Positions 32,043 through 64,000 of a stretch of 64,000 nt of DNA are shown piece after piece. The notes beneath the pieces are model-generated. The model did not search any database, had not been told where the DNA came from, and saw only the letters and a program-made list of their open reading frames with translations. Source of the stretch: Macrostomum lignano (Eukaryota); assembly GCA_002269645.1 (NCBI GenBank), contig NIVC01001868.1, positions 1-64,000 of the forward strand, read 5' to 3'. Both the position numbers and the translations under genes were made by a program. The stretch's first letter is position 1, and the number at the start of each line of letters is the position of its first letter.

Positions 32043-32097
32043 CTGCTTGGGGAAGAGTGCGGGATATGCGAGAACTGCATTCTGTTGTGTACTTGCT

Positions 32098-43292: not shown

Positions 43293-46200
43293 ATGGCATC
43301 GGCAGCTGCAGATTCTGTGGGCAGAAAGTCCTCAGCTCTAGCTCTTCCCGCCAACAATGGCTCAAGCGACCAGGAGCAGCCCGAGGAGATCTCTCTGCTG
43401 TACGCCGGCTCTCCGCCTCCCGTCATCGCCTCTCCGCCGGACACGCCGGAATCTTCGTCGGCTTCCGGGCCGGAGACCTCAGCCGAGGAGCTTCGGCGAC
43501 GTCGCCAGCGAGTGCAGCTGGCCGACAGTCTGGCCGCCTCCTATCCGTCGGCCTCGCTGTCGCGGGCTCTGCGCGACGTGCCCGGAGCTGAAGCTATCGA
43601 AGCTGGCGAAGCCAACAAGCTGGAGCCAACGATCTCGCTGGCGTCAGCGGAGGCTGTGCAGCAGCAGCAGCCGGTGCTGTCCAGAAGCTGCTACGCCAGT
43701 TTGCGCGGCTCGCCAAGCGGTGACAGCGAGCTGGCCGACTTCGACTGGCTGGTGAGTTTGAAGCCGTCGCCAGCTGGCCTGCTGTGCTGCGATCCCATCG
43801 ATGCTGAGCCACCGCCGTTGCAGCAGCAGCAGCAGCAGCAGTCAGCTGAAGACAGCGCGTCAACGGTGGCGGCAGCGGCCGCCGCAGCTTCCAACGATGC
43901 ACCGTCGCCGTTATGCGCCACGCTGCGCGCGCTGAGCGGCGATTACGATCCCCAGGCCGACCGGCTGATGAAGCCGCCCTATTCGTTCTCCTGCCTAATC
44001 TTTATGGCGCTGGAGGCTTCGCCAGACAAATGCCTGCCAGTTAAGAAGATCTACCAATGGATTGAGGACAATTTTCCCTACTACCGGCACGCCAACAACG
44101 GTTGGAAGAATTCCGTTCGGCACAATTTGTCGTTGAATAAAAGTTTCACCAAGGTGTTCCGCGACGTGAGTATGCTTTTTTCTTCGATAATTGAATTTGG
44201 TTGTTTGTTGCCAAGGCATGATTCCAGTATTTAGTGAGAAAAGGGGGTGTGAACTATAGAGTCAAAATTGAGCCCGAAGCATTCGGTCCCGGTTTCTCTA
44301 ATCCAATACCTTCATTTGGAGCTTCAAATGCACGCAGAATAGAAGCGATAGTTATGATACTATGTAATGTTATGCCCCCATTATGTTATCTCTTAATAAT
44401 GTTGACAAGTAGGTTATCCTCCCACCCCAGCACTCTGTGTTTCCCCGCCTTGATGGAGGTATAAATAGCCTCAAGATGGGGTGTTTGTATCACATATTTT
44501 ATAGACGATAGCGGGAGCTGTTTGGCTTCAAATGAAGGAATTGGATTAGAGAAACCGAGATTGAATGTTTTGGGCTCAATTTTGACTTTGCCTCAGATTT
44601 TTGCCTGCCTGCTCAATTCTGTATTTTTTTGGTTCGTCTGAAAAATCGTTGAAAAAGAGTTGAAGGTCAAAGCCTTGTTGTACGTTCTTCTGTTCTGTGA
44701 TGGGTAAAGATAAGTCTTACCGAATATCAAACCCGGAAATTACGAAGAACAAAACATAATAACAAATCTTGAATTTAAAAAAAAATAATTTATTGTGTTG
44801 CTTCTGTTATTGTTATGAACGCGCGGTAAAATACAGCTTTAGCTTAGTTGAATAATTTGTGTTGTCCGAAGTGTTATAAAACCGTTCGCTTTGAAAACTG
44901 TTTTTTTATTAATTCTACAATGAAATTTGCTCATCTGCGCTCAGGTGGCCGATTGCGATTCTGCAGCCGAGGATGAAGAGGTTTGCACTTGCACACCAGT
45001 AGCTCATGTGCTGTGCCCTGTGTTACTTCTAATCTTATTTTAACACAGCTCTTGTGCTGCTTTTCTATTTAGCGTCTTTTTATATTTACAAACCTCTCTG
45101 GTAGCTTTCAATCACTGATACCGAGCTAAACTCTGAGATTCCCTATTTTTTCTGTGCAATCTATGCCCTGTTCAGTACTATATAGCGCTAGCGCCCCTTG
45201 ACATCCTAATTTGGCGCCCCTTGACATCCTAATTTGGCGCCCCTTGACATCCTAATTTGGCGCCCCTTGACATCCTAATTTGGCGCCCCTTGACATCCTA
45301 ATTTGGCGCCCCTTGACATCATAATTTGGCGCCGCTTGACACCCTAATTTGGCGCCGCTTGACACCCTAATTTGGCGCCGCTTGACACCCTAATTTGGTG
45401 CCCCTTGACATCATAATTTGGCGCCCCTTGACATCATAATTTGGTGCCCCTTGACATCATAATTTGGCGCCGCTTGACACCCTAATTTGGTGCCCCTTGA
45501 AACCCTAATTTGGTGCCCCTTGACACCCTAATTTGGTGCCCCTTGACATCCTAATTTGGCGCCCCTTGACATTCTAATTTGGCGCCCCTTGACACCCTAA
45601 TTTGGCGCCCCTTGACACCCTAATTTGGCGCCCCTTGACACCCTAATTTGGCGCCGCTTGACACCCTAATTTGGCTCCCCTTGACATCATAATTTGGCTC
45701 CCCTTGACACCCTAATTTGGCGCCCCTTGACATCCTAATTTAACGCCGCTTGACACCCTAATTTGGTGCCCCTTGAAACCCTAATTTGGTGCCCCTTGAA
45801 ACCCTAATTTGGTGCCCCTTGAAACCCTAATTTGGTGCCCCTTGAAACCCTAATTTGGTGCCCCTTGAAACCCTAATTTGGTGCCCCTTGAAACCCTAAT
45901 TTGGTGCCCCTTGACACCCTAATTTGGTGCCCCTTGACATCCTAATTTGGCGCCCCTTGACATTCTAATTTGGCGCCCCTTGACACCCTAATTTGGCGCC
46001 CCTTGACACCCTAATTTGGCGCCCCTTGACACCCTAATTTGGCGCCGCTTGACACCCTAATTTGGCTCCCCTTGACATCATAATTTGGCTCCCCTTGACA
46101 CCCTAATTTGGTGCCCCTTGACATCATAATTTGGCGCCCCTTGACATCCTAATTTAACGCCGCTTGACACCCTAATTTGGTGCCCCTTGAAACCCTAATT

Positions 46201-49200
46201 TGGTGCCCCTTGAAACCCTAATTTGGTGCCCCTTGAAACCCTAATTTGGTGCCCCTTGAAACCCTAATTTGGTGCCCCTTGAAACCCTAATTTGGTGCCC
46301 CTTGAAACCCTAATTTGGTGCCCCTTGAAACCCTAATTTGGTGCCCCTTGAAACCCTAATTTGGCGTCCCTTGACACCCTAATTTGGCGCCCCTTGAAAC
46401 CCTAATTTGGTGCCCCTTGAAACCCTAATTTGGCGCCGCTCGACACCCTAACTTGGTGCCCCTTGACACCCTAATTTGGTGCCCCTTGACACCCTAATTT
46501 GGCGCCACGACACCCTAATTTGGTGCCCCTTGAAACCCTAATTTGGTGCCCCTTGACACCCTAATTTGGTGCCCCTTGACACAATAAAATTGGTGACTTT
46601 TGCAGTGGCGCCACTTGAGACCCTAAAGTGCCATCTATGATGGCTTTTAGCGCCTATTTCTTCAAGTAGCGCCTTCGTGACTCTGTGATATACGCGAATT
46701 GAGTGCCTGCTCTAACAGAATTATTGGCTTTGACAGCCAGTTACAATGACCCTCTGACCGAATCGTATAACAATGATTTAATTGCTTATGATTTTTTTAA
46801 TCACTGTTCTTGCAAATATATTTGGCAAATTCTAGACTTTCTAGTGCTAACTCTTCACAAAAAAGCCGCAGGTTGGCTTTTGTTTGTTAGGCTTCATTTA
46901 AAAAATGGAAATACCAGCTGACTGACCTCGCGGCTACGCGAAGCATTGCGTACGATTCTATTTTTAGTATATGGACTAGCTCGGAAATAAGGAAAACCAG
47001 CTCGTCTTCTGTGTGTCTCTCTTTATCTCTGGTTTTAGTTGACTTGAACTTAGTCTGTCTATCTTGTATTTTCTATATACCTGCTTACGGCTGTTTTATA
47101 TTATAGGAATAGCAAAATTAATGTACTCAAAAATGACGCAACATTCTATAGTTTGTTAGGATTTTTTTCACACTTTGTAGATTTGCTCATTTTTATGTAA
47201 TAGACATTTTCTCCGTTCAAGCTTGCCGCCTAACCTTTCATTGCGAAGGTATTAATTATATAAGCTACTAATAGTAGAACTAATTGCGCATTATCAATTC
47301 CGCATTAACAATCAGGTGTCAATCAAAGGCTCCCTGTGGACAGTGGATCCCATGGCCAGGGCCGGCATGCTTCAGGCGTTAAAGAAGACGCCTTATCATC
47401 CGTTTGCTCAGGTGCAGATGTACTGCACAGCTGGGACTCTTTATAAAACTGGCGCCAGCGGTGGCCGCGAGCGTCAGCAGCAACAGCAGCAGCAGCAGCT
47501 TCAACAGGCTGCTGGCTCTGTCGCGTCCGCCACCTCGGCTGTCCCGGCCACTACGCTGGGCCGCCTGCGCTACAGCGGCCTGCTGGGAACCGCACTGCTA
47601 GCCGCCGCCGCGGCAGCTGCCAATCCCGGCGCTACGCCATCTGGCGCCGATGCTTCGTCGCCAGCCGCTGCTGACGCTGGAGCTTGCGGTTCCGGTCACC
47701 AGGAAGCCAGTGCCGCCGCCGCTGCTGCACCCGACGATGCTCCATCGGCGACAACATCAGCAGCGGCAACTCCAACTCCGACGCTGCATCAGTATCATCC
47801 GCATGTTAACAGCTTCCGCGGTGTACAGACTCCTCGCGTGAAGTTGGAGCTGTTCGACCCCGCCAGCTCGGCTGCTGGTGGCACGGCTGGCGTCGCCAAG
47901 GAGGCCTCTGACGAGGACGCCTGCAACGGTGGCGTCGAGCGTCAGCAGGCGGGTCGAACTCCGCGCAAGCAGGACCTGGTGCCGTCTGCGCATCTCTATC
48001 CGTTTCTGGCGGCTAAGATGCGACGCCTGGTGCACTTGTTAGGCGATCAGGTGAGAGTCAGCGATGCTTGTTTTATATAAGGACTTATGAGGCTATTTCG
48101 GCGGCCAGCGGGTCTGGCTTTTCAACTGTCAGGCCTGTACACGGCTATCCGTACCTGCTCAAAGATCAGCTGATTGGGCATAACTGCGGGTCCGACTGTC
48201 GTCTTAAAGGGCCTGTCAACTTGGGCTCATAAAGTGGAGCCCGAGTAACCTATGTACACAAATGATACGTCATTCTGCTCACAGTGACGCCAAGAAACTG
48301 GGGGGGGGGCTAACAACAAGAGCATAATTAGGGACTCGACTTTAAGAGCTTAAGTCGATATAATAGTCACTAATCATCCCATTGCTTTTTCTCCCCTATC
48401 CCAATTCTAACTCTTGTCCGTTTTTGCCGAACCCAGCTTCTTGGTGTCACTGTGAGCAAAAGACGTGTCATTTGTGTTCATAGGTTACTCGGGCTCCACT
48501 TTATGAGCTTAAGTTGACAGGCCCTTTGGCGGCAGTGTCCAAGGCCTCCCTAGTTCGTGCATAATCCATTCATCGCATCCATTCCAATGAACGCCCCGCA
48601 GGCGTCCGACCCCGACTGTCTGCAGCACGCCGACGCCAACACCGACGACGACGACGACGAAGAGGAAGATGGCTACGTTGAAGTTGAGCAGCCAGTCAAG
48701 CGGCCGCGCGGTCGGCCTCGCAAAGACAGCGCCCCGGTGTACCGGCCGCTGCCGCTGGCCAAGTCGGCCAATCGCAGGAAGAAAAATCGTCGACTTGGTG
48801 GCGGCAAATCCTCGGGAATGCCGTCAGTCAACGAACTGGTTGCCGCCGCCCAGATGACTCAGATGAAACGAGAGGCTGCCGCCACCGCTGCCGTCGCGGC
48901 CGCTTCTGCTGGTAAGCCGAAGCCGCCAAAACTGGAGCCGGCACCGGCGCCAACATCGCTGCCAGTGTCTCCGTCTCGGCTGCAGGATGCTCAGGCTCTG
49001 TGCCTAGTGTTCAAACGGGCCGCCGACGAGGCCGCTGCCACAACCGCCGCCACCGCTGCCGCCGATTCCGCTGCCGACGCCGAACAGTGCCGCCCGACTG
49101 AGGCAAAAATGCCCAAGCTGATTGCGGCCTCGCGTGCGGCGGCCGACTTGCAAGAGTCAGCGGCCGCGTGAGTAGTCGGGTGGGCTGGGGGCTCTCGGAT

Positions 49201-49818
49201 CCGCTTGCTTGGCCGGCCACCTTCACCCACATTGGCAGGTTTATTTGTCCGCCTTCACCCCACATTGGCAGGTTTATTTGGTCACCTTCACCCCACATTG
49301 GCAGGTTTATTTGTCCGCCTTCACGAACATATTGGCACACAATTAATAGCCAACCGTTATAAAATCCCAGCAGCTCGGCAGATGGAGACGAATCGGAGGC
49401 GTCCTCCTCGGCACTGGTCCGTCTGGCGCTGAATCCGTCGGCCCTGCGTGTACCCTGCGGCCCGGTCAGCCCCACCAACTCGGAGCCCGGCTCAGCCGAG
49501 CAGCAGCAGCAGCAGCAGCCAGTTCCAGCTGTTGGCCAGCAGGAATCCAAGACGCGTACAATTGGCGGTGCTCGCGTCCGGGTACTTCAATCGACTAAGT
49601 CGACTGTCGCCAATACTGCGTCGCAATTTCAGCCGATGATCTCGCTGCCGAAGCTTCATCAGCAGCAGCCTCTGCTGCAGCCGCAGCCTCAGTTGCTGTT
49701 GCAGCCGTTTCTAGCCGCGGCTTCAATGCCGGCTGTTGTTGGAGCGCCAGCAGCTCCAGCATCCACTGTTGGCGGCTCGCTCTCTCATTTTATTATTAAA
49801 CTGGCTGGCAATCGGTGA
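43293..49818 (+). CDS. FOXN3: Forkhead box protein FoxN2/3, 4 exons, about 889 aa
   Basis: Exons 43293-44165, 47316-48050, 48554-49167, 49371-49818 (2670 nt). The forkhead domain [15 protein letters not shown]...[19 protein letters not shown] is joined across intron 1 to KGSLWTVDP...[11 protein letters not shown] (FoxN2/3 signature). The start codon and exon 4 are less certain than the forkhead domain. Confidence 0.9.
44257..44590. mobile_element. MITE-like inverted repeat (about 70-bp arms) in FoxN intron 1
   Basis: gtcaaaattgagcccgaagcattcggtcccggtttctctaatccaat versus its reverse complement at about 44520-44590. No TSD found. Confidence 0.75.
45191..46582. repeat. 23-bp minisatellite in FoxN intron 1
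   Basis: Unit gg(c/t)gccccttga(c/a)accctaattt; block duplication visible (taacgccgct at 45741 and about 46156). Confidence 0.97.
48208..48525. mobile_element. MITE with about 95-bp TIRs, Kolobok-like TTAA|AGGG terminus, in FoxN intron 2
   Basis: TTAA at 48204-48207 is followed by agggcctgtcaact. The right end gttgacaggccct is followed by TTGG (possibly decayed TTAA). Confidence 0.75.
49220..49325. repeat. Three copies of a 32-33 bp unit in FoxN intron 3
   Basis: ccttcacc(c)cacattggcaggtttatttg repeated three times. Confidence 0.85.
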
Positions 49819-50389
49819 TCAAGACCGTCAACCTGAACATGAATATGAACAAACGCTGGTATATTTCTATAAATAGCCCACGGGAATCCCCGCAGTCTTA
49901 ATTTAGAAGCGAATCCTTTCTCTCTTGTTAGTATATGCGTAAACCACGTTGGATTTTTGTTGGGGCTGCGAGCATATATTCTGGCAGTAGTTATTTCTCT
50001 TTTTTTTGCGCACAACATTGCAGCAATATATTGTGTATATCTGTGTAATATGTGCGCGACAGGCATCTCATTTGCGTCTACAAGCAATTGTTTCTATCTG
50101 TACTACATATATGCCATTTTGTGCGCGCCCAGCGCTGCATACTGAGAACAGTTTGTGAATTTCTTGACGCTTCTATCATTGTTAAATTACGCATTAAGTT
50201 GCCCTGGTATTCAATCTCTGTGTGTGATTGCAATTTTTATCCAGTTCAGCTAGCTATTCTGTCAGCAGGACTTATTCGGTTCAATATTGATGTAGTTGCA
50301 CATGATATTCTCTCTCAGTAAATACTTTTTTGTCCACCCTCCCAAATTGCTCTCTAGCCCATTATTTTTCCAAAAATCCGCAAAATTAT

Positions 50390-50815
50390 TACCGTGTAGA
50401 AACCGGGCCTATCACAATGTAGAAACCGGCCCAATACAGTGTAGAAACCGGCATATTACCGTGTAGAAACCGGGCCTATCACAATGTAGAAACCGGCCCA
50501 ATACAGTGTAGAAACCGGCATATTACCGTGTAGAAACCGGGCCTATCACAATGTAGAAACCGGCCCAATACAGTGCAGAAACCGGCATATTACCGTGTAG
50601 AAACCGGGCCTATCACAATGTAGAAACCGGCCCAATACAGTGTAGAAACCGGCATATTACCGTGTAGAAACCGGGCCTATCACAATGTTGAAACCGGCCC
50701 AATACAGTGTAGAAACCGGCATATTACCGTGTAGAAACCGGCATATTACCGTGTAGAAACCGGTATATTACCGTGTAGAAACCGGCATATTACCGTGTAG
50801 AAACCAGGCCATTGC
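50390..50815. repeat. Minisatellite with 67-bp trimeric higher-order repeat (23+22+22 bp)
   Basis: Core gtagaaaccgg followed in turn by gcctatcacaat, cccaatacagt and catattaccgt; period 67 (50401 to 50468). Confidence 0.93.
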
Positions 50816-51769
50816 TCGTACAATGTAGAAATAGGCCCATCGCCATGTAGAAATCGTAAGCAGTAATTCTGTTGCTATGCGAGAAGGAACTCAGCTGTTT
50901 CTAATAAGTAATAAGTTAGCTCAGTTCAAGTCATCATTGTGCATACCAATGAAACTATTGTATTCAGAGCTCAGTCAGTCATGTAAATAAATCATTACTA
51001 AAAACAGTGTGTTTAATACAAGCTATAGTCTTCAGTTGTTACTATGAGTAATCTAATGCATAGCAACTATCTATGCAATGCATCATATTAATCTCTCTCT
51101 CTCTCTCTCGCCGTGTCTCTAATAATTATGCATTTTGTGGCCCATTGTATTCTAGTTTATTCTAGGCTTTGCTTGGCAATCGGTTTATAATCTTATTAAT
51201 TAAATATAATAGTTTCGTAAGTCTTATTGGTATTGCTCCATTTCGCACGCTTCATAGCTGCGGTGCAATCTGTTTAATAAATTTAAGTATACAATTATCA
51301 TATCTATATTATATATACCATTAAATGCAGTCATTTTTCGCTGAAATAATTAAAAATCCTTGCCCATCTGGTCGCTCTGTCTCTGTCTGTTTTATATTCT
51401 TGTATTTATTTACAGATATATACACATCTATTCATTTATCTGCATTGTTGTTTTCTTCTCATTTACGCTTGACAGTTTATACAGACGCTTCTCCGTATAT
51501 GCAGATTTGATAATAAGCAACCATGCACACTATAGATTGATGGCTTATGAGTATTCAACTAATTTTATTGTGTTATTTCTATCATGGTTTACTGCTTATG
51601 TATTGCTAAACATTTCATGCTTGCTTTTCCATGCTTTTCCATTGAAGCCAGTTTTTGACGTGTAAGACTTGTGCAAATAGTTACGATTATATAATTGCTT
51701 GTAGGGGCGCCACAATGGGTGTGTCAGTAGCGCACCATAATTGGTGTGTCAGTGGCGCCAAGTATGGTT

Positions 51770-52024
51770 GTTATTAGCACCCAAAGCGGCCTTATTAGCG
51801 TTAAACGGGTGTTATTAGCGTCTATTATGGGTGCAATTAGCGTTTAATATGGGTGTCATTAGAGCCTAATATGGATACCATTAGCGTCTAATATTGATAC
51901 CATTAGCGCCTAATATGGATGTCATTAGCGTCTAATATGGATTCCATCAGCGCCTAATATGGGTGTCATTAGCGTCTAATATGGGTGTCATTGGCGTCTA
52001 GTATGGGTGCCATTAGCGCCTAAT
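51770..52024. repeat. Degenerate 22-bp minisatellite
   Basis: Unit cattagcg(c/t)ctaatatgggtgt. Confidence 0.8.
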
Positions 52025-53334
52025 GTGAGGCTCAATTATTGTTAAGAATTGGCTTCGATTTAGTAGTGGAATCGCACCACCTCCTCCCACCCCCAGTTCA
52101 TGACGCGCGAATTTCATATCGAAGCGAAACTAAATTATTGTTTTGCATTGTCCACACTAATATTTGTTATTATTTATCTAACGCAGCAGGGGGTCTTCCG
52201 CGTTCGTTTTTATTATGAAAGAAAGAATTATGTTTTTTGTGCTTATTTCCCTTTCCCTGGTGAAAGCATTCAGCAGGTATTCATTTTTCTGGTTATGGTT
52301 TGCCAAGCAATACAGTTTGTTGTGGTTTTTGTTGCAATCTTAACCCTACAATCAGTTGTCCTGTGCGAGTATTATTGTTATATTATTTATTATTGTTATT
52401 ATTATTGCTGCTAATTGTCATATTTTGCTATTTTATAATTATTTTTAATGCAAGACAATTTTGCTCTGGAGTTTATCCAACTATCCTGTTGCACACAGGC
52501 TTAGGCGGTACTACCATTAGTATTTACATTGTCTTGCTATATTTGCTACAACCTCTTTTGTCTTCATTTCAGAATCAGTTTTTATTCTCCTCCAGCTCCG
52601 CTTCCTAAGATTCTTCTTGTATTAAGTAGAGCGGCGAGGATGAAGTTATTATTTTTTGAGAAATTATCGAGTTTCTAACGAATATAACGAATTTCATTGG
52701 TTTAAATCCAGCAGTTATTGGCGTGTGAATTTAAAAAAGTAATGTTTTCCCCAGGTTGTAGACATGAAATTGTATGTTTTCTTTTCTTTGTCTCTTTTTG
52801 AGCTTCTTCATTCACTGTCAAATTGTGAAAGCTTGCCGTCAGAGTCTGTTTTAAAACCAAGCTGTATAGTCGGAATTATTTATGCTATATGGTAGTATGG
52901 TATGTAGTCGCATCGGTCTGTGTTGTAATCATTTTAGTATGTTAATCCTAGGATTGCACACACTTATACTGTTATTTTTTAGAGAATATTTGCGCTAATG
53001 AGCATTATCAGTGGTCACGAGTGATTTGTGACAGACATTTTTATTATTATTAATTGCCGTGTCCATCAGGGGTTGTTGGCTTACAATAAATATTATATAT
53101 GAGCTATATGCACCTTTTTGCTCGCTTGTTTGCTAATTTTGTTCATTATAATTGAAATATAAATAATCTCTAAGTACTATTAATACACTTTAAAGCACAT
53201 TGTAAAAGGCTTACCCTAACATCATGATACATTTTTCCCTGGCACTAAAAATAGCGCTGAAAATGTCAGACTTTTCATTGTTTATTTGTGCATATTTTCA
53301 TCTATTTAGTACTTAGAGGTAAATGACTTTCCCC

Positions 53335-53968
53335 AGTTCCCCATTGAGTCTGTGGGGATATTCTAGTGCCTCCAGTTTCCCATTGGATCTGTGAGGATAT
53401 TCTAGTGCCTCCAGTTCCCGCTTGAGTCTGTGGGGATATTTTAGTGACTCCAGTTCCCGATTGAGTCTGTGGGGATATTTTAGTGACTCCAGTTCCCGAT
53501 TGAGTCTGTGGGGATATTTTAGTGACTCCAGTTCCCGATTGAGTCTGTGGGGGATATTCTAGTGCCTCCAGTTCCCGCTTGAGTCTGTGGGGGATATTCT
53601 AGTGCCTCCAGTTTCCCATTGGATCTGTGAGGATATTCTAGTGCCTCCAGTTCCCGCTTGAGTCTGTGGGGATATTTTAGTGACCCCAGTTCCCGATTGA
53701 GTCTGTGGGGATATTTTAGTGACTCCAGTTCCCGATTGAGTCTGTGGGGGATATTCTAGTGCCTCCAGTTCCCGCTTGAGTCTGTGGGGGATATTCTAGT
53801 GCCTCCAGTTCCCGATTGAGTCTGTGGGGATATTCTAGTGCCTCGAGTTCCCGATTGAGTCTGTGGGGGATATTCTAGTGCCTCGAGTTCCCGATTGAGT
53901 CCGTGAGGGATATTCTAGTGTCTCCACTTCCCCATTGAGTCTGTGGGGATATTTTAGTGCCTGGGGAT
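53335..53968. repeat. 39-40 bp minisatellite just upstream of the FLCN acceptor
   Basis: Unit ttgagtctgtggggatattctagtgcctccagttcccga. Confidence 0.95.
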
Positions 53969-54028
53969 ACTTTATCCCCAGCTGCAATCCATCCCTCGAT
54001 GCGTCCCCCGCACCCCTAACCCTCTCAG

Positions 54029-57000
54029 AACTGCCTAGTGGCGCTGACCCACTTCTGCGAGGACCACGGGCCCTCGGTGGTGATGTGCACCCAGGCGGTG
54101 AGGCTGTCCGGCTTGCCGGTAGCCAAAGGCGGCAGCTGCTTGGACGGCACAACAATCAGTTCGGCGCTGCCAGGCGGTCCGGCCAGTCTGACTTCAACGA
54201 AATGCCCGGCTTGCCGCTCGATGCCGCCCAACACCTTGGCAATGTACACAGCCGACTGGCAGGGCGACTTGCTACTTGTGTCCAGCCAGCACCCAGCCGC
54301 TCCCAATCAGTTATATAGCCAGCTGCGTCAGGCCTGCCTTCGTGTGCACTCGTGCGAAGTCTGTCCAACCGGAGCTATGTACTTTGGCGACGATGCCGGC
54401 GGCGGCGGCGGCGGCTGCCACGTGTTCGCCAGTCCGTTCCAGCTAGACGACGTGAAAGCTCGCGGCCTGTCTAGCCAGTTCTCTGTGCTGGCGCTGTCGC
54501 GCGACGGTCGAATGCTGCTGCAATCCTGGCCTTGGCTGGTCAACCGCTCGGCCGAGATCATCGCCGGCCTGCGCGACGCCGCCGCAGCCCAGTTCTCAGC
54601 TGAGCAATCGGCCGGCTGTTCGGCTAGGGCTGCGCGAATCAACGGGTCCGGCTGGGTTCGAATGCGCCGGTCTGACGTGCCGGCCAGGTCGCTGGCCCAG
54701 CTGACTAGCAATCCAAGCGTCTACAGGCGGTTGCACGCCTGCTTTGCCCGACTGCTGCGCGGCTGGCAACGGGAAGAGCTGGCGCCTGGCAGGCCTACCG
54801 AGGATCAGCTGGCTTTGAACTCGGTGCTGTGCCTGGCTGAGGAGGTGAGAGTGTGTGAGAGTGCTCGTGAGGACTAACCGATCTGACCTGTCCTAAAGAA
54901 TCGCCTCTGAGCTGCCCTTGGAAATCGCCTCTGAGCTGTCAAAAAGAATCGACGTTGAGTCTCCCTAAAAAACAAATTTGTTATTGAATCTCAATACAGA
55001 AATATTCTCTGATCTAAGGCTTTTTAATAATCGTCTCTGACTTTAAAACCATTCTTGAGTCTCTCTAACATCCTTGAGTCTCCTGAGTCTCTTTAACACC
55101 ATCCCTGAGTCTCTAACACAATCCTTGAGTCTCTAACACCATCTTCGAGTCTCTAACACAATCCTTGAGTCTCTAACACCATCTTCGAGTCTCTAACACA
55201 ATCCTTGAATCTCTAACACTATTTTCGAGGAGTCTCTAACACAATCCTTGAGTCTCTAACACCATCTTCGAGTTTCTAACACCTTCCTTGAGTCTCTAAC
55301 ACTATCTTCGAGTTTCTAACACCTTCCTTGAGTCTCTAACACTATCCTTGAGTTTCTAACACCTTCCTTGAGTCTCTAACACTATCTTCGAGTTTCTAAC
55401 ACCTTCCTTGAGTCTCTAACACTATCCTTGAGTTTCTAACACCTTCCTTAAGTCTCTAACACCATCTTCGAGTTTCTAACACCTTCCTTGAGTCTCTAAC
55501 ACTATCCTTGAGTTTCTAACACCTTCCTTGAGTCTCTAACACTATCTTCGAGTTTCTAACACCTTCCTTGAGTCTCTAACACTATCTTCGAGTTTCTAAC
55601 ACAATCCATGAGTCTCTAACACCATCTTCGAGTTTCTAACACAATCCATGAGTCTCTAACACGATCTTCGAGTCTCTAACACCTTCCTTGAGTCTCTAAC
55701 ACTATCTTCGAGTTTCTAACACCTTCCTTGAGTCTCTAACACTATCTTCGAGTTTCTAACACCTTCCTTGAGTCTCTAACACTATCTTCGAGTCTCTAAC
55801 ACAATCCATGAGTCTCTAACACCATCTTCGAGTTTCTAACACCTTCCTTGAGTCTCTAACACTATCTTCGAGTCTCTAACACAATCCATGAGTCTCTAAC
55901 ACCATCTTCGAGTCTCTAACACCTTCCTTGAGTCTCTAACACTATCTTCGAGTTTCTAACACCTTCCTTGAGTCTCTAACACCATCTTCGAGTTTCTAAC
56001 ACCTTCCTTGATTCTCTAACACTATCTTCGAGTTTCTAACACCTTCCTTGAGTCTCTAACACTATCCTTGAGTTTCTAACACCTTCCTTGAGTCTCTAAC
56101 ACCATCTTCGAGTTTCTAACACCTTCCTTGAGTCTCTAACACTATCCTTGAGTTTCTAACACCTTCCTTGAGTCTCTAACACTATCTTCGAGTTTCTAAC
56201 ACCTTCCTTGAGTCTCTAACACTATCTTCGAGTTTCTAACACAATCCATGAGTCTCTAACACCATCTTCGAGTTTCTAACACAATCCATGAGTCTCTAAC
56301 ACCATCTTCGAGTCTCTAACACCTTCCTTGAGTCTCTAACACTATCTTCGAGTTTCTAACACCTTCCTTGAGTCTCTAACACTATCTTCGAGTTTCTAAC
56401 ACCTTCCTTGAGTCTCTAACACTATCTTCGAGTCTCTAACACAATCCATGAGTCTCTAACACCATCTTCGAGTTTCTAACACCTTCCTTGAGTCTCTAAC
56501 ACTATCTTCGAGTCTCTAACACAATCCATGAGTCTCTAACACCATCTTCGAGTCTCTAACACCTTCCTTGAGTCTCTAACACTATCTTCGAGTTTCTAAC
56601 ACCTTCCTTGAGTCTCTAACACCATCTTCGAGTTTCTAACACCTTCCTTGAGTCTCTAACACTATCTTCGAGTCTCTAACACAATCCATGAGTCTCTAAC
56701 ACCATCTTCGAGTCTCTAACACCTTCCTTGAGTCTCTAACACTATCTTCGAGTTTCTAACACCTTCCTTGAGTCTCTAACACCATCTTCGAGTTTCTAAC
56801 ACCTTCCTTGAGTCTCTAACACTATCTTCGAGTCTCTAACACAATCCATGAGTCTCTAACACCATCTTCGAGTCTCTAACACCTTCCTTGAGTCTCTAAC
56901 ACTATCTTCGAGTTTCTAACACCTTCCTTGAGTCTCTAACACCATCTTCGAGTCTCTAATACCATCCTCGACTCTCCCCTAAGGATTGTTCTTAAGCCGC

Positions 57001-60000
57001 CCCAAAAAATGACTCTTTAAAATCGTTTTTTATAAAGCATCTAAAGCTGGTTTTCACACACTAAGAAGAATTAATCGAAGTTAATAAAAACAACCGTCTC
57101 AAAATGTCAGGACGAAGACTCCGCAGATGACGGCATTCGCACTGTGGTTCCCACACCCACAAAACTTGTCGGAGGCGGCGACGGTGGCGGCAGCAGCGGT
57201 CTAGGTGGGGAAGGCGTCCAGCTCTCGGTTGTGAGCGCAGTATTTCACTCGCTGCGCCACGTGCGCGAGCGTTTGCACCAGGCGCCGCCAGCTTGTCAGT
57301 CGATTGATAATTTCAGCCTGCTGCTGCATCACCTGCTCACAGGCAATCAGATCGTGTTTCGAACTTTGCTGCCTGAGCTGGCTAAATCATTTTTCACTTT
57401 GCTGCGTTGCCTACTGCCTAGCAACTGTTCTCAGGAGCTGCTCAACTGGCAACGATATGAGGAACCCTATAGGTGAGTGGGAGTCTTGTCAGTTTACATG
57501 TAGATTGTAGGAGGCATTATTAGGTCTGACTTTCTAATCGTCAGGCATGTACTCTCTGTGTCTTGGTGGTTGATTGTTCAATCCCGTTGAAAACGTCACC
57601 GAGACAAGAATCGCTAAAGAGTGATTGCAAACAACTCACTCAGTGACTCTAGCGACTCTTGGGGCGACTCTTGTGACTTTTTAACGACTCAAACAACTGT
57701 AATGCAACGGAGAGGCGACTGTTGAGTCACGAGCGCATCACGTGAGTTGCAGAGTCGTAAAAGAGTCGCGAAAGAAGTCGTTCAAGAGCCGTTGTGTTTG
57801 CGCTTAACTTTCTACTAACATAAGTAGCCTAAATAGAGTTGTGTTATAAATGCGAAATGCGATTCTAATTCATTAAGTGACCAGATGCGCTTTAGACGCA
57901 ACTCAGTGATTCTGCAGCGGCTCTGGCACGCCTCAGATACGACTCTACGGACTTCCTAATAGTCCGTCCTAGTTAGCATTTTATTATACGAATGGACCTT
58001 ATTGAAAGTGTCTGGCTGCAATGGGTTATTTAACGGTCAGTTTCTATCATGCTGCATCATCAAACCAGGTGCAACCTGTTAGGCCTGACTGCCGATACTC
58101 GCCTACCAGATTGGATCGCCGCCGACGGCGAGGGCCATCCAATGCTACTGCTGGACTGTCGGCCTGACGCGTCAGCGCTTGCTGCACAGGTAAGCTCTGG
58201 CTGGGCTTGTGCGTGTGCGTGAGTGTTGGTTGATGAGTGCTCCCTGGCGCTTATGTACCAGTACCTGGGTGATATAGCACTAACTGAAGCTGGGAGCAAG
58301 CAATTCAATCCTTTCGATGGAGAATCAAGCTATTGATAAAACTAAAGATAAAGCTCTCCTCACTAAATTCCTCGTCTGCCATATCCGGGTTTTTCTGATG
58401 AAATCTGTGGTTGCTCCATTGAACCATCTTTTGGACCATGGACAATGAAAAACAAGTCTTTAATAGCTGGATTCTCCCAGTGAGGGTTGAATTGACTGCT
58501 ACTAAGGCTCAATTGGCTTCGAAAAATGCTACATTAATTTGGGGACAAGCTGGCATTGTCGTGTGATTCACGACCATTAGGGCCAACCTCAAGGCACAGA
58601 GAGTGTACATGCTTTGAAGTCCGTGATGCAGTGACAGTTTGGCAAGAAACTTTAAAAGAGATAAACAACCTATCCATTAGTGTTGTTTTTAGTTAACATA
58701 GCGCCAAGTGAGGATTTTCCATAGACATTACCAGCGGACAAGCTGCCGTCATGGAGGAAACATGAAACAAGAGAAAAGGTTATCTATGTTAATACTACAG
58801 CCTAGCATGCGCGTTAATCGTGAATTTCCCCCGCGTACAAGCTTCAGCCATTAAGAAATTAGGGGGGGGCTATTATTAAATTCAAGCAGCCAATGAAATT
58901 CATGGAAGGGATATCCCTATTTTTAGGAAGTCTTGGCCATAGACTCGCTTTCAGATGAGCGATCCTTTCTATTCCTTCATCCATGGCTGCCGTGCACACA
59001 GATTCAATTCACCCCTAGATGGGCCACTCAAGGCCGCAGTGCGAAAACCCCGGGGTTCAAGCCATAGACTGTAGCTTCTTTTGCGGTCAAGCATTACCAG
59101 CAGCAGCTGGTGTCTGTGGCCCAAACCCTGGGGTTTCCGTGACCTCGGAGAGGGCCGCTAAATACATTAGCGAATGCTGGAGCGACAGCTAAGTCTAATA
59201 TAGAATCTGTAGCCGTGCATTTTCGTACTTCGTTTGAAGTCTTGACTTATCAGCGTATCATACACACTTCCGGCGGCTTATTTATTGTTTTATTAATGTA
59301 TAACAAATAAAAGTTCCTACTTTGTTAGTAGTATGCATTTACCAACCCCAAAATACGCAACAAACATTGCAACAGGCTTTCATACCCGTAGACGATCTGG
59401 ATCTAGTAGTGACAACCAATAGGCCTGCCCGGCCGGCCGCTCAGCTGATTGGCCAAATTGACTCCCTGCTGGGCGATCCGGTGCTGCCTGAAGAGTCTCT
59501 CGATCTACTTCTGGCCAATGCTAAAGAGGATTGGCTAGAACGGGCTAGACAAACCTACGCTTTTATGCAGGTGAATATTTGTTTGATTGTGTACTTTGGT
59601 GTCTGCCTAATCTGATAATTGGCAGTGGCTACTTCAAGTTAAATTTATTGATTGTCGCTATAAAGCGCGCCAATATCAGTGTAAGGAGCGCCAATATAAG
59701 TGTAAGGAGCGCCAATATCAGTGCAAGGAGCGCCAATATCAGTGCAAGGAGCGCCAATATCAGTACAAAGGAGCGCCGATATCAGAACAAGGAGCGCCAA
59801 TGTCAGTACAAAGGAGCGCCGATATCAGAACAAGGAGCGCCAATATCAACAGTAGGGGCGTCAATATCAGTAAGATTAGCGCCAATATCAGTACAAGGGG
59901 CGCCAATATCAGTACAAGGGGCGCCCATATCACTACAGGAGCGCTAATATCAGTACAAGGGGCGCCAATATCAGTACAAGGGGCGCCAATATCAGTACAA

Positions 60001-60752
60001 GGGGCGCCAATATTAGTACAAGGGGCGCCAATATCAGTACAAGGGGCGCCAATATCAGTACAAGGGGCGCCAATATCAGTACAAGGGGCGCCAATAGCAG
60101 TACAAGGGGCGCCAATATCAGTACAAGGGGCGCCCATATCACTACAGGAGCGCTAATATCAGTACAAGGGGCGCCAATATCAGTACAAGGGGCGCCCATA
60201 TCACTACAGGAGCGCTAATATCAGTACAAGGGGCGCCAATATCAGTACAAGGGGCGCCAATATCAGTACAAGGGGCGCCAATATCAGTACAAGGGGCGCC
60301 AATATTAGTACAAAGGGCGCCAATATCAGTACAAGGGGCGCCCATATCACTACAGGAGCGCTAATATCAGTACAAGGGGCGCCAATATCAGTACAAGGGG
60401 CGCCAATATCAGTACAAGGGGCGCCAATAGCAGTACCACCAGTAGCTCAGCGGGTCAAAAATTGTTCAAATCAGTTTTTAGATTGATCAAACCGATTGTA
60501 AATCCGTAATTTGAAACGGCCTTAAGCCTTGCTGACACTACTATTAGTAGTTTAATCTAAAGGTAATTTGTTCATAAATTGTGTCAAAAATGCAATTCGC
60601 AGGCGCACAGGCGGCAGTTCTCCGATGGCCAAGTGACCGCCTTTCTATCCTCTCTAGGCTGTCAACGAGCCGACGAGATTGTACTGAAATTCTGGACTCG
60701 TGGTATCAGCGGATTAACCCGTAGAGAGATTATCAAATCATGCAGGCAATAG
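54029..60752 (+). CDS. FLCN: Folliculin (BHD protein), 5 coding exons; initiator Met not encoded in the first large exon
   Basis: Exons 54029-54844, 57111-57472, 58069-58189, 59376-59570, 60603-60752. Motifs NCLVALTHFCEDHGP, LRQACLRVHSCEVCP, FQLDDVKARGLSSQFS, FHSLRHVR, HLLTGNQIV, YEEPYRCNLLGL, KEDWLER, LKFWTRGIS. 548 aa if a Met is added. Confidence 0.93.
55085..56965. repeat. 20-bp minisatellite (largely 40-bp dimers) in the FLCN intron after the first coding exon
   Basis: Alternating gagtctctaacac(t/c)atcttc and gagtttctaacaccttcctt, with acaatccatg variants. Confidence 0.97.
57628..57801. repeat. Small degenerate inverted repeat built of CGACTC/GAGTCG subrepeats
   Basis: gcaaacaac...cgactctt units on the left; aagagtcg...gttgtgtttgc on the right. 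Confidence 0.5.
59665..60432. repeat. 21-bp minisatellite in the last FLCN intron
   Basis: Unit gcgccaatatcagtacaagg(g/a). Confidence 0.95.
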
Positions 60753-60964
60753 AAATTGCTGCCCTATGCTTGGCAGTTGGTTTTATATGTTTTGTCCATT
60801 GACGTTTTTTAGTTTTGTTTCAGTTGTTTAAATACTGGCTCGTTACTCTTTAGAGTAAATAGTATCAAACATTTAGGAATTAGTTCTATTGTTCTGAATT
60901 ATTAAAAATCTGCGGCTCCTTTGCTTATGCAAATCTTGTACACATTGCGCTAAATGCGTACATT

Positions 60965-61840
60965 GGTCCTTCAGCGGGTGGTTGCTGCTAGCCACTGGTC
61001 CTTCAGCGGGTGGTTGCTGCTAGCCACTGGTCCTTCAGCGGGTGGTTTCTGCTAGCCACTGGTCCTTCAGCGGGTGGTTGCTGCTAGCCACTGGTCCTTC
61101 AGCGGGTGGTTGCTGCTAGCCACTGGTCCTTCAGCGGGTGGTTGCTGCTAGCCACTGGTCCTTCAGCGGGTGGTTGCTGCTAGCCACTGGTCCTTCAGCG
61201 GGTGGTTGCTGCTAGCCATTGGTCCTTCAGCGGGTGGTTGCTGCTAGCCACTGGTCCTTCAGCGGGTGGTTGCTGCTAGCCACTGGTCCTTCAGCGGGTG
61301 GTTGCTGCTAGCCACTGGTCCTTCAGCGGGTGGTTGCTGCTAGCCACTGGTCCTTCAGCGGGTGGTTGCTGCTAGCCACTGGTCCTTCAGCGGGTGGTTG
61401 CTGCTAGCCACTGGTCCTTCAGCGGGTGGTTGCTGCTAGCCACTGGTCCTTCAGCGGGTGATTGCTGCTACCCATTGGTCCTTCAGCGGGTGGTTGCTGC
61501 TAGCCACTGGTCCTTCAGCGGGTGATTGCTGCTAGCCACTGGTCCTTCAGCGGGTGGTTGCTGCTAGCCACTGGTCCTTCAGCGGGTGGTTGCTGCTAGC
61601 CACTGGTCCTTCAGCGGGTGGTTGCTGCTAGCCATTGGTCCTTCAGCGGGTGGTTGCTGCTAGCCACTGGTCCTTCAGCGGGTGGTTGCTGCTAGCCACT
61701 GGTCCTTCAGCGGGTGGTTGCTGCTAGCCACTGGTCCTTCAGCGGGTGGTTGCTGCTAGCCACTGGTCCTTCAGCGGGTGGTTGCTGCTAGCCACTGGTC
61801 CTTCAGCGGGTGGTTGCTGCTAGCCATTGGTCCTTCAGCG
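60965..61840. repeat. 32-bp highly homogeneous minisatellite between FLCN and JOSD
   Basis: Unit ggtccttcagcgggtggttgctgctagccact. Confidence 0.97.
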
Positions 61841-62659
61841 AACCGCTCATAGCCACCAAAAACCCTCACTTGTCAATAACTTTTTGATTCTATCTTACCT
61901 CGCGCATACGTAGTTCAGTATCAATATGTAAATTATAAATTAGATGGAAATTAGATGGATTACTCAAGACCTAGTTAGATGCGAAATTGTTTTATACATA
62001 ATTTGTTTCTTATTTATTATTGAAATTCCCGCCAAAAAATATTTATAATCGATATTTAGTACTTACTATGCTACTACTGTTACGATTTTGAACCTGCTTA
62101 AGCGCGTATACTACAGACTACTACTCGTCTACAAAGATTACATTTAATTTTTCTTAATTCTGAAGTCACTTTATTTATACATTTTTTAGCCATTTTAAAT
62201 ACAGCTTATATCTGCTGTAGCTGGCTGCATTCATTGTTAGCTTGCAGTTTTCATTGCGCTTTATGTGTCCTCAGATTTATAGAATGCGGACATTTTTGCT
62301 TTCTACGTATTGCTGCGTCTTTCAGCAAATCCCCCCGCAAAGCGCAGTGCTTTATGACTGCGTGTATATTTAATTGTTCAAAAGAATCGATGTATCCTAC
62401 TGTTAGTAGGAGTCCAATTTACTGTGGAAATTTTCAGTTAATCATATACACGCGACATGCGAATTATTCTACTTCATCACTGATTTTACAGACCGGCTTT
62501 CAGTGTGCGCGCTTTTTGTATTTCCACAGCGCAGAGCAGATATTTTATAAACTTGATAGCAAATAAATTTGCAAAGATATATATATATATATTTTTCCTT
62601 TGTTTTGGTATTTCTGTTATTTTTGTATCAAACTAGGTGTCAATGGATACATACATACA

Positions 62660-62950
<291 letters not shown>

Positions 62951-63074
62951 GACATGTTCGAGCTTCGCTAGATTTTCAATCACTTACATCAGCTGTTGCT
63001 TTTCATGGTCAAGCAGAAAGCATTAGCCTGCAAGCCGCCCTCTAACAGCTTCAGCTGCAGCCGTAGATAGCGCA

Positions 63075-63830
63075 ATGAATTCGCACGCCCAGCAGGCGGC
63101 GCCCTATCACGAGCGCCAGCGACTATTATTATGCGCGGTGCACGCGGCTAATAATCTTCTGCAACGGCCAGAGTTCACTCAGAGCCAGTTTGACCAGCTG
63201 TGCCAGTCTTTGTCGCCGCAACAGGTCAAGTTATTAGCTTGCTTATCGCCCTTACTGACTCAGGTTACCGTGTGCACTGCTTAGATACCTATCTATGCCT
63301 ACATGGGTCACTAACCTATGCTCATTCAATATCCTTTAATATAATATCATTATTAAAAGTACACCCGTCGCCGGGCCCGCTATCTCTCCCGACAGACCTG
63401 GCTGCTAAATCCTCATCGGAATCCCCTCGGCCTTGGCAACTACGACGCTAACGTGTTGGACGCCGCCTTGCAGAGCCGCGGCCTTCGCCTAGTCTGGTTC
63501 GACCGGCGCAAACCGGTCGCCTGCCTGCTGCCCGACAGAATCGAAGGCTTCCTAATCAATTACCAATCGGCTGCCTGCTCCGTGCTGCCGATAATCCGCT
63601 CCCGCCATTGGGTGGCGCTCCGGCGCTGCGGCCCGAACAATGAGTATCATAATCTGGATTCCAAAATGGCCGAGCCCAGCCTCATTGGTTCAGGACAGCC
63701 TGCCGATCTGCTGCACTATCTGCAGGCCAGGCTGGATGCCGACGCCAGTCTGCAGATTCTCCCGGTTGTACTGCCCGAGGTGGCCGACTCTGGCGACTGG
63801 CAGCTGGCGCAACCGGCGTCTGATGAATGA
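63075..63830 (+). CDS. JOSD2: Josephin-domain deubiquitinase (JOSD1/2-like), 2 exons, 194 aa
   Basis: Exons 63075-63224 and 63396-63830. YHERQRLLLCAVHAANN (catalytic Cys), GNYDANV, RHWVAL (His), YHNLDSK (Asp). No UIM/polyQ tail, so JOSD rather than ataxin-3. Confidence 0.94.
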
Positions 63831-64000
63831 TAGAGGTTGATTAATTAATTTATATGCGATGTTTACCTCTTGCTGCTCTCTACTACATAGCTAAGGATCA
63901 GTGGTATGGCCAGTATTTTCCTTAATATTTCCTTAAGTAGATTGTAAAAATATTGTTGAGTAGATTGTAGAGATTGTTGAATAGATTGTACGGAGATTGT

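What the first reader, a model, noticed from the sequence alone, without database searches (positions are those of the whole stretch)
54010..54070. FLCN lacks its own start codon: Met1 probably supplied by a trans-spliced AUG-ending leader
Seen: the first FLCN exon begins right after a CTAAC-CCTCTCAG acceptor with AAC TGC CTA GTG GCG CTG (N-C-L-V-A-L-T-H-F). An in-frame TAA at 54017-54019 excludes an unspliced upstream ATG. Established: FLCN proteins begin MNA(I/V)(V/I)ALCHFCE, so exactly one codon (Met) is missing, and flatworm spliced leaders end in AUG that can act as initiator. Inference: the acceptor is an SL trans-splice site and a conserved tumour-suppressor orthologue depends on the leader for its Met. 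Competing model: a cis micro-exon ending ATG|GTATGT at 52897-52905.
Basis: partly seen in the sequence, partly recalled or inferred. Interest (0 to 1): 0.8.

Follow-up and report, generated by a model that had tools for sequence, protein, structure and literature searches.

The report
Flatworm folliculin gene borrows its start codon
In the flatworm Macrostomum lignano the folliculin (FLCN) gene has no start codon of its own and almost certainly gets its first methionine from the AUG at the end of the trans-spliced leader, a mechanism known in flatworms since 2006, so this is a clean new example and not a new phenomenon.

Summary
The window is the first 64 kb of Macrostomum lignano contig NIVC01001868.1 (assembly Mlig_3_7). 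FLCN exon 1 starts at 54029, directly after ...CTAACCCTCTCAG. Its first codon (Asn) aligns with residue 2 of human FLCN. An in-frame TAA lies at 54017-54019, and no in-frame ATG lies between it and the exon.

- The published M. lignano spliced leader is 35 nt long and ends in ATG. The exon is in phase 0, so the junction reads ATG|AAC.
- All six GenBank FLCN gene models in this genome are "partial" and lack a Met. They cover three near-identical copies and three copies of a paralogue with 52% protein identity. Four of the six begin exactly at the acceptor. The pipeline that built them trims the leader from reads and cuts transcripts at leader-read peaks.
- The paralogue has an unrelated upstream sequence but the same AG|AAC junction and no ATG.
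- Codons 2-19 differ between the paralogues by 8 synonymous changes and 1 conservative change, so they are translated. The first genomic in-frame ATG (54083) is Leu in the paralogue.
- The rival cis donor at 52897 (ATG|GTATGT) is specific to this copy and does not match the donor consensus. No consensus donor upstream follows an in-frame ATG.

I could not see leader-containing reads. Confidence is about 0.88. This is a new member of a known kind and of low interest.

The parts
54015..54028 (+). 3' splice acceptor (CTAACCCTCTCAG) used as the inferred SL trans-splice site. The AG is at 54027-54028.
   Evidence: Sequence. It is identical in the three near-identical loci. It is pyrimidine-rich, unlike the four cis acceptors of the same gene. 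It matches 5 of 6 positions of the published trans-acceptor motif [T/C]TNCAG (PMC8629364). GenBank model PAA61881.1 starts at the base after the homologous AG.
53999..54019 (+). Six-codon in-frame ORF in the presumed outron (ATG CGT CCC CCG CAC CCC TAA). Its TAA (54017-54019) closes the frame upstream of exon 1.
   Evidence: It shows that an unspliced transcript cannot supply Met1.
54029..54844 (+). FLCN coding exon 1 in phase 0. It starts with Asn2 and has no initiator codon. Donor: GAG|GTGAGA.
54083..54085 (+). First genome-encoded in-frame ATG (residue 20 if the SL Met is residue 1). It is not the conserved start.
   Evidence: It is CTA (Leu) in the paralogue. Codons 2-19 upstream of it show 8 synonymous changes and 1 conservative change between the paralogues.
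57111..57472 (+). FLCN exon 2
   Evidence: Spliced mapping of PAA63135.1 onto the window.
58069..58189 (+). FLCN exon 3
59376..59570 (+). FLCN exon 4
60603..60752 (+). FLCN exon 5, ending in the stop codon TAG (60750-60752)
52897..52905 (+). Judged unlikely.
   Evidence: It is specific to this copy. L001 and L002 have ATG|GTAGTC next to a ~30-bp indel. Neither form matches the GT[G/A]AG donor consensus that the gene's own introns match in 3 of 4 cases.
53333..53962 (+). 39-nt minisatellite (16 copies) inside the presumed outron, ending 66 nt upstream of the acceptor.
   Evidence: Copy number differs among the three loci.

Best explanation
The FLCN pre-mRNA of Macrostomum lignano is transcribed from somewhere upstream of 54029. 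Its 5' part (the outron, which contains the 39-nt minisatellite and a short in-frame ORF) is removed by spliced-leader trans-splicing at the AG at 54027-54028. The 35-nt leader CGGTCTCTTACTGCGAAGACTCAATTTATTGCATG is joined to exon 1, so the mature mRNA reads ...UUGC AUG|AAC UGC CUA.... The leader's terminal AUG is the first AUG on the mRNA and is in frame, so it serves as the initiator. The resulting protein starts MNCLVALTHFCEDHGP..., matching the MN(A)(I/V)(V/I)ALCHFCE start of FLCN in other animals.

Shown here: the gene structure, the absence of a genomic start codon, the reading-frame match, conservation in a paralogue, and selection on codons 2-19. Taken from the literature: the leader sequence, and the fact that flatworm leader AUGs can act as initiators. 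Inferred: that this particular acceptor receives the leader and that ribosomes start at the leader's AUG.
For: 1. Asn at 54029 aligns with residue 2 of human FLCN. 71 of 74 relatives begin with a Met directly at the conserved N-terminal motif; the other three are the Met-less M. lignano models.
2. The in-frame TAA at 54017-54019 and the absence of an ATG or near-cognate codon before the exon rule out an unspliced start.
3. The window is M. lignano Mlig_3_7. Its SL ends in ATG followed by a GTAAG donor, and about 30% of genes are trans-spliced (PMC8629364). PMC10468722 notes that the Macrostomum SL's final ATG is probably a translation start codon.
4. All six GenBank FLCN models (PAA63135.1 for this window, PAA61881.1, PAA74221.1, PAA63318.1/PAA82963.1, PAA69252.1) are 'partial' with no Met. 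Four start exactly at Asn2 and two start 2-3 codons further in. Two UniProt models from an older assembly also start NCLVAL. The annotation pipeline trims the SL from reads and cuts transcriptional units at SL-read peaks (PMC5730564). Names ending g2, g3 and g5 suggest FLCN was cut out of longer units.
5. Neighbouring genes in the same loci (Josephin, Branch, CoA-transferase) all have their own ATG, so the Met-less FLCN models are not a general annotation artefact.
6. The paralogue with 52% protein identity (L004/L005) has ...AAATCTTTCAG|AACTGTCTC, an in-frame TAA 45 nt upstream and no ATG. Ungapped identity is 35% in the 60 nt upstream and 80% in the 60 nt downstream of the junction.
7. Codons 2-19 show 8 synonymous changes and 1 conservative change between the paralogues. 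The first genomic ATG (54083) is Leu in the paralogue.
8. No ATG|GT[GA]AG exists in the 3.4-4.2 kb upstream in any of four loci. No consensus donor there is preceded by an in-frame ATG-opened ORF.
9. The SL sequence is absent from the window and from all fetched loci, so a leader would have to come in trans.
10. The mechanism is established. The SL AUG is in frame in 28% of trans-spliced S. mansoni transcripts, and more than 40 cDNAs need it to initiate (Cheng et al. 2006, as summarised in PMC9851317; also PMC12582326).
Against: - No SL-containing read or cDNA for this gene was seen here. The link between the annotation's 5' ends and SL-read peaks is inferred from the published method, not from the SL track itself.
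- Two of the six GenBank models (including the one for this window) start 6 and 9 nt inside the exon and not at the AG. I cannot explain this from the data at hand.
- The acceptor TCTCAG matches only 5 of 6 positions of the published trans-acceptor motif.
- About 35% of M. lignano cis donors fall outside GT[G/A]AG, so a non-consensus ATG|GT donor (five candidates in 4.2 kb, about the number I would expect by chance) is not formally excluded.
- Use of the SL AUG by ribosomes is inferred from selection on codons 2-19, not from protein or ribosome-profiling data.
Confidence: 0.88

Rival explanations
1. A cis-spliced 5' micro-exon ending in ATG, such as ATG|GTATGT at 52897-52905, is joined to 54029 and supplies Met1. 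No trans-splicing is involved.
For: The site exists, and an ATG|GT is present at the homologous place in L001 and L002. GTATGT is a plausible though non-consensus donor. About a third of M. lignano donors lie outside GT[G/A]AG.
Against: - The donor hexamer differs between copies: GTATGT here, GTAGTC in L001 and L002, next to a ~30-bp indel.
- Five ATGGT in 4.25 kb is about the number I would expect by chance, and none is GT[GA]AG.
- The divergent paralogue has no comparable candidate, only ATG|GTGCTT and ATG|GTTATC.
- None of six GenBank and two UniProt transcript-based models contains such an exon, although the pipeline assembled cis-spliced reads.
- The gene's own donors are GTGAG, GTGAG, GTAAG and GTGAA.
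Confidence: 0.07
2. Translation starts inside exon 1, either at the genomic ATG at 54083 or at a non-AUG codon such as GTG at 54038. In that case the first residues are not part of the protein, whatever is spliced on upstream.
For: ATG at 54083 is the first genomic in-frame ATG, and a GTG lies at codon 5. The GenBank model for this window happens to begin at that GTG.
Against: - Codons 2-19 are under clear protein-level constraint between the paralogues: 8 synonymous changes and 1 conservative change.
- They match the conserved FLCN N-terminus from residue 2 onwards.
- ATG 54083 is CTA in the paralogue, and GTG 54038 is ATT in the paralogue.
- On an SL-capped mRNA the leader's AUG would be met first by a scanning ribosome.
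Confidence: 0.03
3. The missing ATG is an assembly error, or marks a decaying pseudogene copy in this highly duplicated genome.
For: The DV1 line's genome is partly duplicated, and the assembly holds several near-identical copies of this region.
Against: - The junction is base-for-base identical in three independent contigs, and the same structure occurs in the paralogous loci for which DNA was fetched, L004 and L005.
- All copies keep intact 544-581 aa reading frames with Folliculin N and C domains.
- Substitutions between the paralogues are mostly synonymous at the N-terminus.
Confidence: 0.02

Closest known systems
Flatworm mRNAs that use the spliced leader's 3'-terminal AUG as initiator methionine (Cheng, Cohen, Ndegwa & Davis 2006, J Biol Chem 281:733; described for Schistosoma mansoni)
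   Same: The SL ends in AUG directly before its GU donor. The acceptor sits immediately before codon 2 in phase 0. The recipient gene has no in-frame AUG of its own at the orthologous start. The leader's AUG restores the conserved N-terminal Met.
   Different: The species is a free-living basal flatworm (Macrostomum lignano) and the gene is FLCN. Here the case rests on genome structure, annotation and paralogue comparison, not on cDNA and translation assays. The dependence is shared by two paralogues with 52% protein identity.
slORFs: open reading frames created or extended by start codons carried on spliced leaders (slORFfinder, PMC9851317)
   Same: This is an in-frame slORF: the SL start codon shares its frame and stop codon with the main ORF.
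   Different: In nematodes, tunicates and trypanosomes the leader mostly supplies non-canonical NUG codons and the genes usually keep their own AUG. Here a canonical AUG is supplied and the gene has none.
SL trans-spliced genes of M. lignano as annotated by the TBONE pipeline (Wudarski et al. 2017, PMC5730564; Ustyantsev & Berezikov 2021, PMC8629364)
   Same: The same genome, the same 35-nt SL, a CAG acceptor with an upstream pyrimidine run, and gene models that begin at the trans-splice site.
   Different: Those papers do not analyse use of the SL AUG as a start codon and do not mention FLCN. The acceptor here is TCTCAG and not the top motif [T/C]TNCAG. The paralogue's TTTCAG fits that motif.
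Folliculin (FLCN/BHD) of other animals, e.g. human FLCN (PDB 6ULG, 6NZD)
   Same: Longin plus DENN architecture (Pfam Folliculin and Folliculin_C). The N-terminal motif (M)N-x-[IVL]-[IV]-A-L-x-H-F-C-E-x-H-G-P is conserved from residue 2.
   Different: In the FLCN relatives retrieved the predicted protein begins with a Met at this motif, presumably genome-encoded. In M. lignano the genome does not encode it.

Membership tests
SL-AUG-initiated flatworm mRNAs (Cheng et al. 2006 class) | The organism has an SL RNA whose leader ends in AUG immediately 5' of the GU donor | tested here: met
   The window was identified as M. lignano. The published SL is CGGTCTCTTACTGCGAAGACTCAATTTATTGCATG followed by GTAAG (PMC8629364). 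This comes from the literature; the SL RNA gene is not in the window.
SL-AUG-initiated flatworm mRNAs (Cheng et al. 2006 class) | A 3' splice acceptor lies directly before codon 2 in phase 0, so the SL AUG is in frame and adjacent | tested here: met
   AG at 54027-54028. AAC at 54029 aligns with Asn2 of human FLCN. The paralogue has the same structure.
SL-AUG-initiated flatworm mRNAs (Cheng et al. 2006 class) | The genome encodes no initiator at the orthologous start, and the frame is closed upstream | tested here: met
   TAA at 54017-54019 with no ATG between it and the exon. In the paralogue TAA lies 45 nt upstream with no ATG.
SL-AUG-initiated flatworm mRNAs (Cheng et al. 2006 class) | No upstream cis donor delivers an in-frame ATG to this acceptor | tested here: inconclusive
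   No ATG|GT[GA]AG and no consensus donor preceded by an in-frame ATG-opened ORF in four loci. No annotated upstream exon in eight models. Non-consensus ATG|GT sites exist at about the number I would expect by chance and cannot be excluded without reads.
SL-AUG-initiated flatworm mRNAs (Cheng et al. 2006 class) | Transcripts carry the SL joined to this acceptor | not testable with these tools
   Support is indirect only. The 5'-partial gene models begin at the acceptor, and they come from a pipeline that trims the SL and cuts at SL-read peaks. No M. lignano transcript contigs were found in the searchable collections.
SL-AUG-initiated flatworm mRNAs (Cheng et al. 2006 class) | Ribosomes initiate at the SL AUG | not testable with these tools
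   Indirect: codons 2-19 are under purifying selection (8 synonymous, 1 conservative change), and the next genomic ATG is not conserved.
Folliculin (FLCN) orthologue | Folliculin N-terminal (longin) and C-terminal (DENN) domains, and a full-length alignment to human FLCN | tested here: met
   PF11704 E=3.4e-31. PF11704 and PF16692 are recorded for the full gene product. Human FLCN E=1.9e-37. tblastn hits lie along the gene.
Downstream gene of an M. lignano operon (criterion of Ustyantsev & Berezikov 2021) | Repeat-adjusted distance to the upstream same-strand gene below 1 kb | tested here: inconclusive
   The distance from the Forkhead stop (49817) to the acceptor is 4211 nt, or about 2.8 kb after subtracting the tandem repeats. 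The 3' UTR end of Forkhead is unknown. Gene names g2, g3 and g5 in other copies suggest longer transcriptional units, but this window's copy is g1.

The most novel reading that the evidence does not exclude
Dependence of FLCN on the spliced leader for its start codon is old and is being maintained. It predates the duplication that produced the two paralogues (52% protein identity) and has been kept in every copy. Translation of this mTORC1-pathway regulator would then be strictly conditional on trans-splicing and on the leader's special cap. That could couple FLCN output to the growth and nutrient state of the animal, or to its stem cells, where trans-spliced genes are over-represented according to PMC8629364.
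Probability: 0.1. Interest if true: 0.5.

Novelty: new member of a known kind. Interest (0 to 1): 0.22.

Why it matters
The value is mostly practical. GenBank and UniProt list all M. lignano FLCN proteins as 5'-partial fragments without a Met. The simplest correction is to add the leader-encoded Met, which makes them full-length proteins (548 aa for this copy). The same correction probably applies to many other "partial" M. lignano gene models, because trimming the leader also removes its ATG.

For transgenesis in this model flatworm, a reporter built from the FLCN upstream region would need the acceptor and trans-splicing to be translated.

Biologically it is one more example, in a free-living basal flatworm and in a conserved tumour-suppressor orthologue, of a mechanism described for schistosomes in 2006. 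The conservation across paralogues shows that such dependence can be stable over long periods.

Tried and rejected
- searching the large protein collection with the typed exon-1 peptide gave no hits, although a 98% identical protein is in the collection. It was found later. I treat this as a prefilter quirk.
- an Rfam scan of the window found nothing, so there is no SL RNA or other known RNA family here.
- searches with the full protein and with a seven-sequence profile returned only the two M. lignano clusters. No transcript-derived fragments and no other Macrostomum or flatworm orthologues were retrievable, so the check in related species could only be done on the within-genome paralogue.
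- one Logan transcript contig of a distant FLCN (P0035, SRR25404267, organism unknown) has an AT-rich 73-nt leader with its own ATG and nothing resembling a flatworm SL. This was uninformative.
- the supplements of PMC5730564 and PMC5816591 mention neither FLCN nor the three gene ids.
- no paper in the library combines folliculin with spliced leader.
- the Wasik et al. 2015 genome paper is not held.
- **CTAAC as branch point:** I did not pursue it. It lies only about 10 nt from the AG and is not conserved in the paralogue.
- **Non-AUG initiation in the outron:** rejected. The three codons after the TAA (CCC TCT CAG) are not near-cognate start codons.
Full report
**What is in the sequence**

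Positions 54015-54028 read CTAACCCTCTCAG. An open reading frame starts at 54029 with AAC TGC CTA GTG GCG CTG ACC CAC TTC. TAA at 54017-54019 is in the same frame, and the three codons between it and the exon (CCC TCT CAG) are neither ATG nor near-cognate start codons. The only in-frame ATG nearby (53999-54001) opens a six-codon ORF that ends at that TAA.

The 272-residue exon product is folliculin: Pfam PF11704 E=3.4e-31, and human FLCN chains 6ULG_L and 6NZD_H at E about 2e-37. In both the HMMER and tblastn alignments, Asn at 54029 pairs with Asn2 of human FLCN. A search of 1.84 billion representative proteins gave 387 relatives. Of the 74 with a recognisable N-terminal motif, 71 begin with a Met directly at it, mostly as MN/MD/ME. 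The other three are the M. lignano models, which have no Met. Exactly one codon, the initiator, is missing.

**Where the window comes from**

The best hit (98% identity) is a Macrostomum lignano protein, and its cluster holds three GenBank and two UniProt entries. Locus L003, fetched through PAA63135.1, is contig NIVC01001868.1 of assembly Mlig_3_7 (GCA_002269645.1). It equals window 44038-64000 at 100% identity with matching coordinates, so the window is the first 64 kb of that contig.

**Gene structure**

Mapping PAA63135.1 onto the window gives five exons: 54029-54844, 57111-57472, 58069-58189, 59376-59570 and 60603-60752, with stop TAG. The four cis donors are GTGAG, GTGAG, GTAAG and GTGAA. 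The four cis acceptors are all CAG|G without a pyrimidine run. The first acceptor is pyrimidine-rich.

A Forkhead gene lies upstream on the same strand, with its stop at 49817. A Josephin gene lies downstream with its own ATG at 63075.

**What the literature says about this organism**

- M. lignano has a single 35-nt spliced leader, CGGTCTCTTACTGCGAAGACTCAATTTATTGCATG, followed in the SL RNA gene by GTAAG.
- About 30% of genes are trans-spliced.
- The top trans-acceptor motif is [T/C]TNCAG, and the cis donor motif is GT[G/A]AG (PMC8629364).
- The Mlig_3_7 annotation was built by trimming the leader from SL-containing reads, mapping them, and cutting assembled transcriptional units at the resulting peaks. 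ORFs were then called with TransDecoder (PMC5730564).
- A later Macrostomum genome paper notes that the leader's final ATG is probably a translation start codon (PMC10468722).
- The terminal AUG of flatworm leaders can be the initiator. This has been known since Cheng et al. [quoted passage not shown]

**Evidence that this acceptor takes the leader**

1. **Frame.** The exon is in phase 0, so the SL-exon junction reads AUG|AAC and restores MNCLVALTHFCE.
2. **Gene models.** All six GenBank FLCN models in this genome are labelled partial and lack a Met. Three belong to near-identical copies (this window, L001, L002), and they start at Val5, Leu4 and Asn2 respectively. Three belong to a second paralogue and all start at Asn2. 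Two UniProt models from an older assembly also start NCLVAL. None has an upstream exon. This is what trimming a leader that includes the ATG would produce.
3. **Not a general artefact.** Neighbouring genes in the same loci (Josephin, Branch, CoA-transferase) begin with genomic ATGs.
4. **Paralogue.** The second paralogue (52% protein identity, loci L004/L005, also downstream of a Forkhead gene) has ...AAATCTTTCAG|AACTGTCTC. Its acceptor fits the published motif exactly, an in-frame TAA lies 45 nt upstream, and there is no ATG. Ungapped identity between the two paralogues is 35% in the 60 nt upstream of the junction and 80% in the 60 nt downstream. Conservation therefore begins exactly at the acceptor.
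5. **Selection.** Between the paralogues, codons 2-19 differ by eight synonymous changes and one conservative change (Val/Ile). The first genomic in-frame ATG (54083-54085) is CTA in the paralogue. These codons are therefore translated, and the internal ATG is not the conserved start.
6. **No genomic leader nearby.** The leader sequence is absent from the window and from all fetched loci.

**The cis alternative**

ATG|GTATGT at 52897-52905 is real, but it lies next to an indel of about 30 bp. In L001 and L002 the homologous site is ATG|GTAGTC. Neither form fits GT[G/A]AG.

The 4.25 kb between the Forkhead stop and the acceptor holds five ATGGT, which is about the number I would expect by chance, and none has a consensus donor. 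The paralogue has two, also non-consensus. Of the consensus donors in these regions (7, 10, 8 and 2 in the four loci), none is preceded by an in-frame ATG-opened ORF. About a third of M. lignano donors are non-consensus, so this rival is not excluded, but nothing favours it.

**Weak points**

- I could not see any SL-containing read or cDNA.
- The models for this window and for L001 start 9 and 6 nt inside the exon and not at the AG. I cannot explain this.
- The acceptor TCTCAG matches the trans motif at 5 of 6 positions.
- The CTAAC branch point is conjecture. It lies about 10 nt from the AG and is not conserved in the paralogue.
- Whether FLCN is part of an operon is unclear. The repeat-adjusted distance from the Forkhead stop is about 2.8 kb, and the published threshold is 1 kb.

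**Verdict**

The mechanism is a textbook feature of flatworm trans-splicing, the leader of this species is published, and the public annotation already reflects the trimmed leader. No paper in the library links folliculin with a spliced leader. This is therefore a new member of a known kind with modest interest. Its main use is to correct the 'partial' FLCN entries (and probably many others) by adding the leader-encoded Met, and to guide reporter design. The one mildly novel point is that the dependence on the leader's AUG is shared by two paralogues with 52% protein identity, so it is old and stable.

Noticed in passing
window 53333-53962; L001 9304-9951; L002 8754-9934: A 39-nt minisatellite ends 66 nt upstream of the FLCN acceptor. 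It has 16 copies here and about 30 in L002. Some units carry GTGAGG, which matches the cis-donor consensus. This fits the published remark that repeats inflate intergenic and outron distances in M. lignano.
   Followed up: partly
window 55084-56976: A 40-nt minisatellite (47 copies, 92% matches) fills most of FLCN intron 1. Most of it has no counterpart in the near-identical loci L001 and L002, so intron length differs by more than 1 kb between copies.
   Followed up: no
L004 and L005 (M. lignano contigs NIVC01000440.1 and NIVC01001855.1), gene at 6001: A second FLCN paralogue (581 aa, 52% identity) also lies downstream of a Forkhead gene. The Forkhead-FLCN pair was therefore duplicated as a block, which would fit the hidden polyploidy reported for this species (my inference). 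Josephin is not its downstream neighbour; a CoA-transferase gene lies there on the opposite strand.
   Followed up: partly
window 34775-35725 (+): A 316-aa ORF with a piggyBac-type transposase domain (PF13843, E=1.8e-47). It covers profile positions 1-240 of 349, so it is probably truncated or interrupted.
   Followed up: no
window 8100-11600, 15900-18500, 20800-22400, 27900-29400, 59600-61900: The window is full of minisatellite arrays that create long spurious ORFs on both strands. Several lie inside or next to genes: the choline-transporter-like exons at about 8965-10859 and FLCN introns 4 (59571-60602).
   Followed up: no
window 62640-62980: A trinucleotide repeat of about 340 bp, seen as poly-Leu, poly-Tyr, poly-Thr and poly-Val ORFs, lies between FLCN and Josephin.
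   Followed up: no
GenBank models PAA63135.1 (window 54038) and PAA74221.1 (L001 10001): Two of the six 5'-partial FLCN models start 9 and 6 nt inside exon 1 and not at the acceptor, although the DNA around the junction is identical in all three loci. The reason is unknown; it may come from the annotation pipeline.
   Followed up: partly
window 31324-32103 (-): A GC-rich ORF with a DXD glycosyltransferase domain (PF04488, E=4.6e-11) on the minus strand. It overlaps long alternative-frame ORFs that arise from its high G+C content.
   Followed up: no
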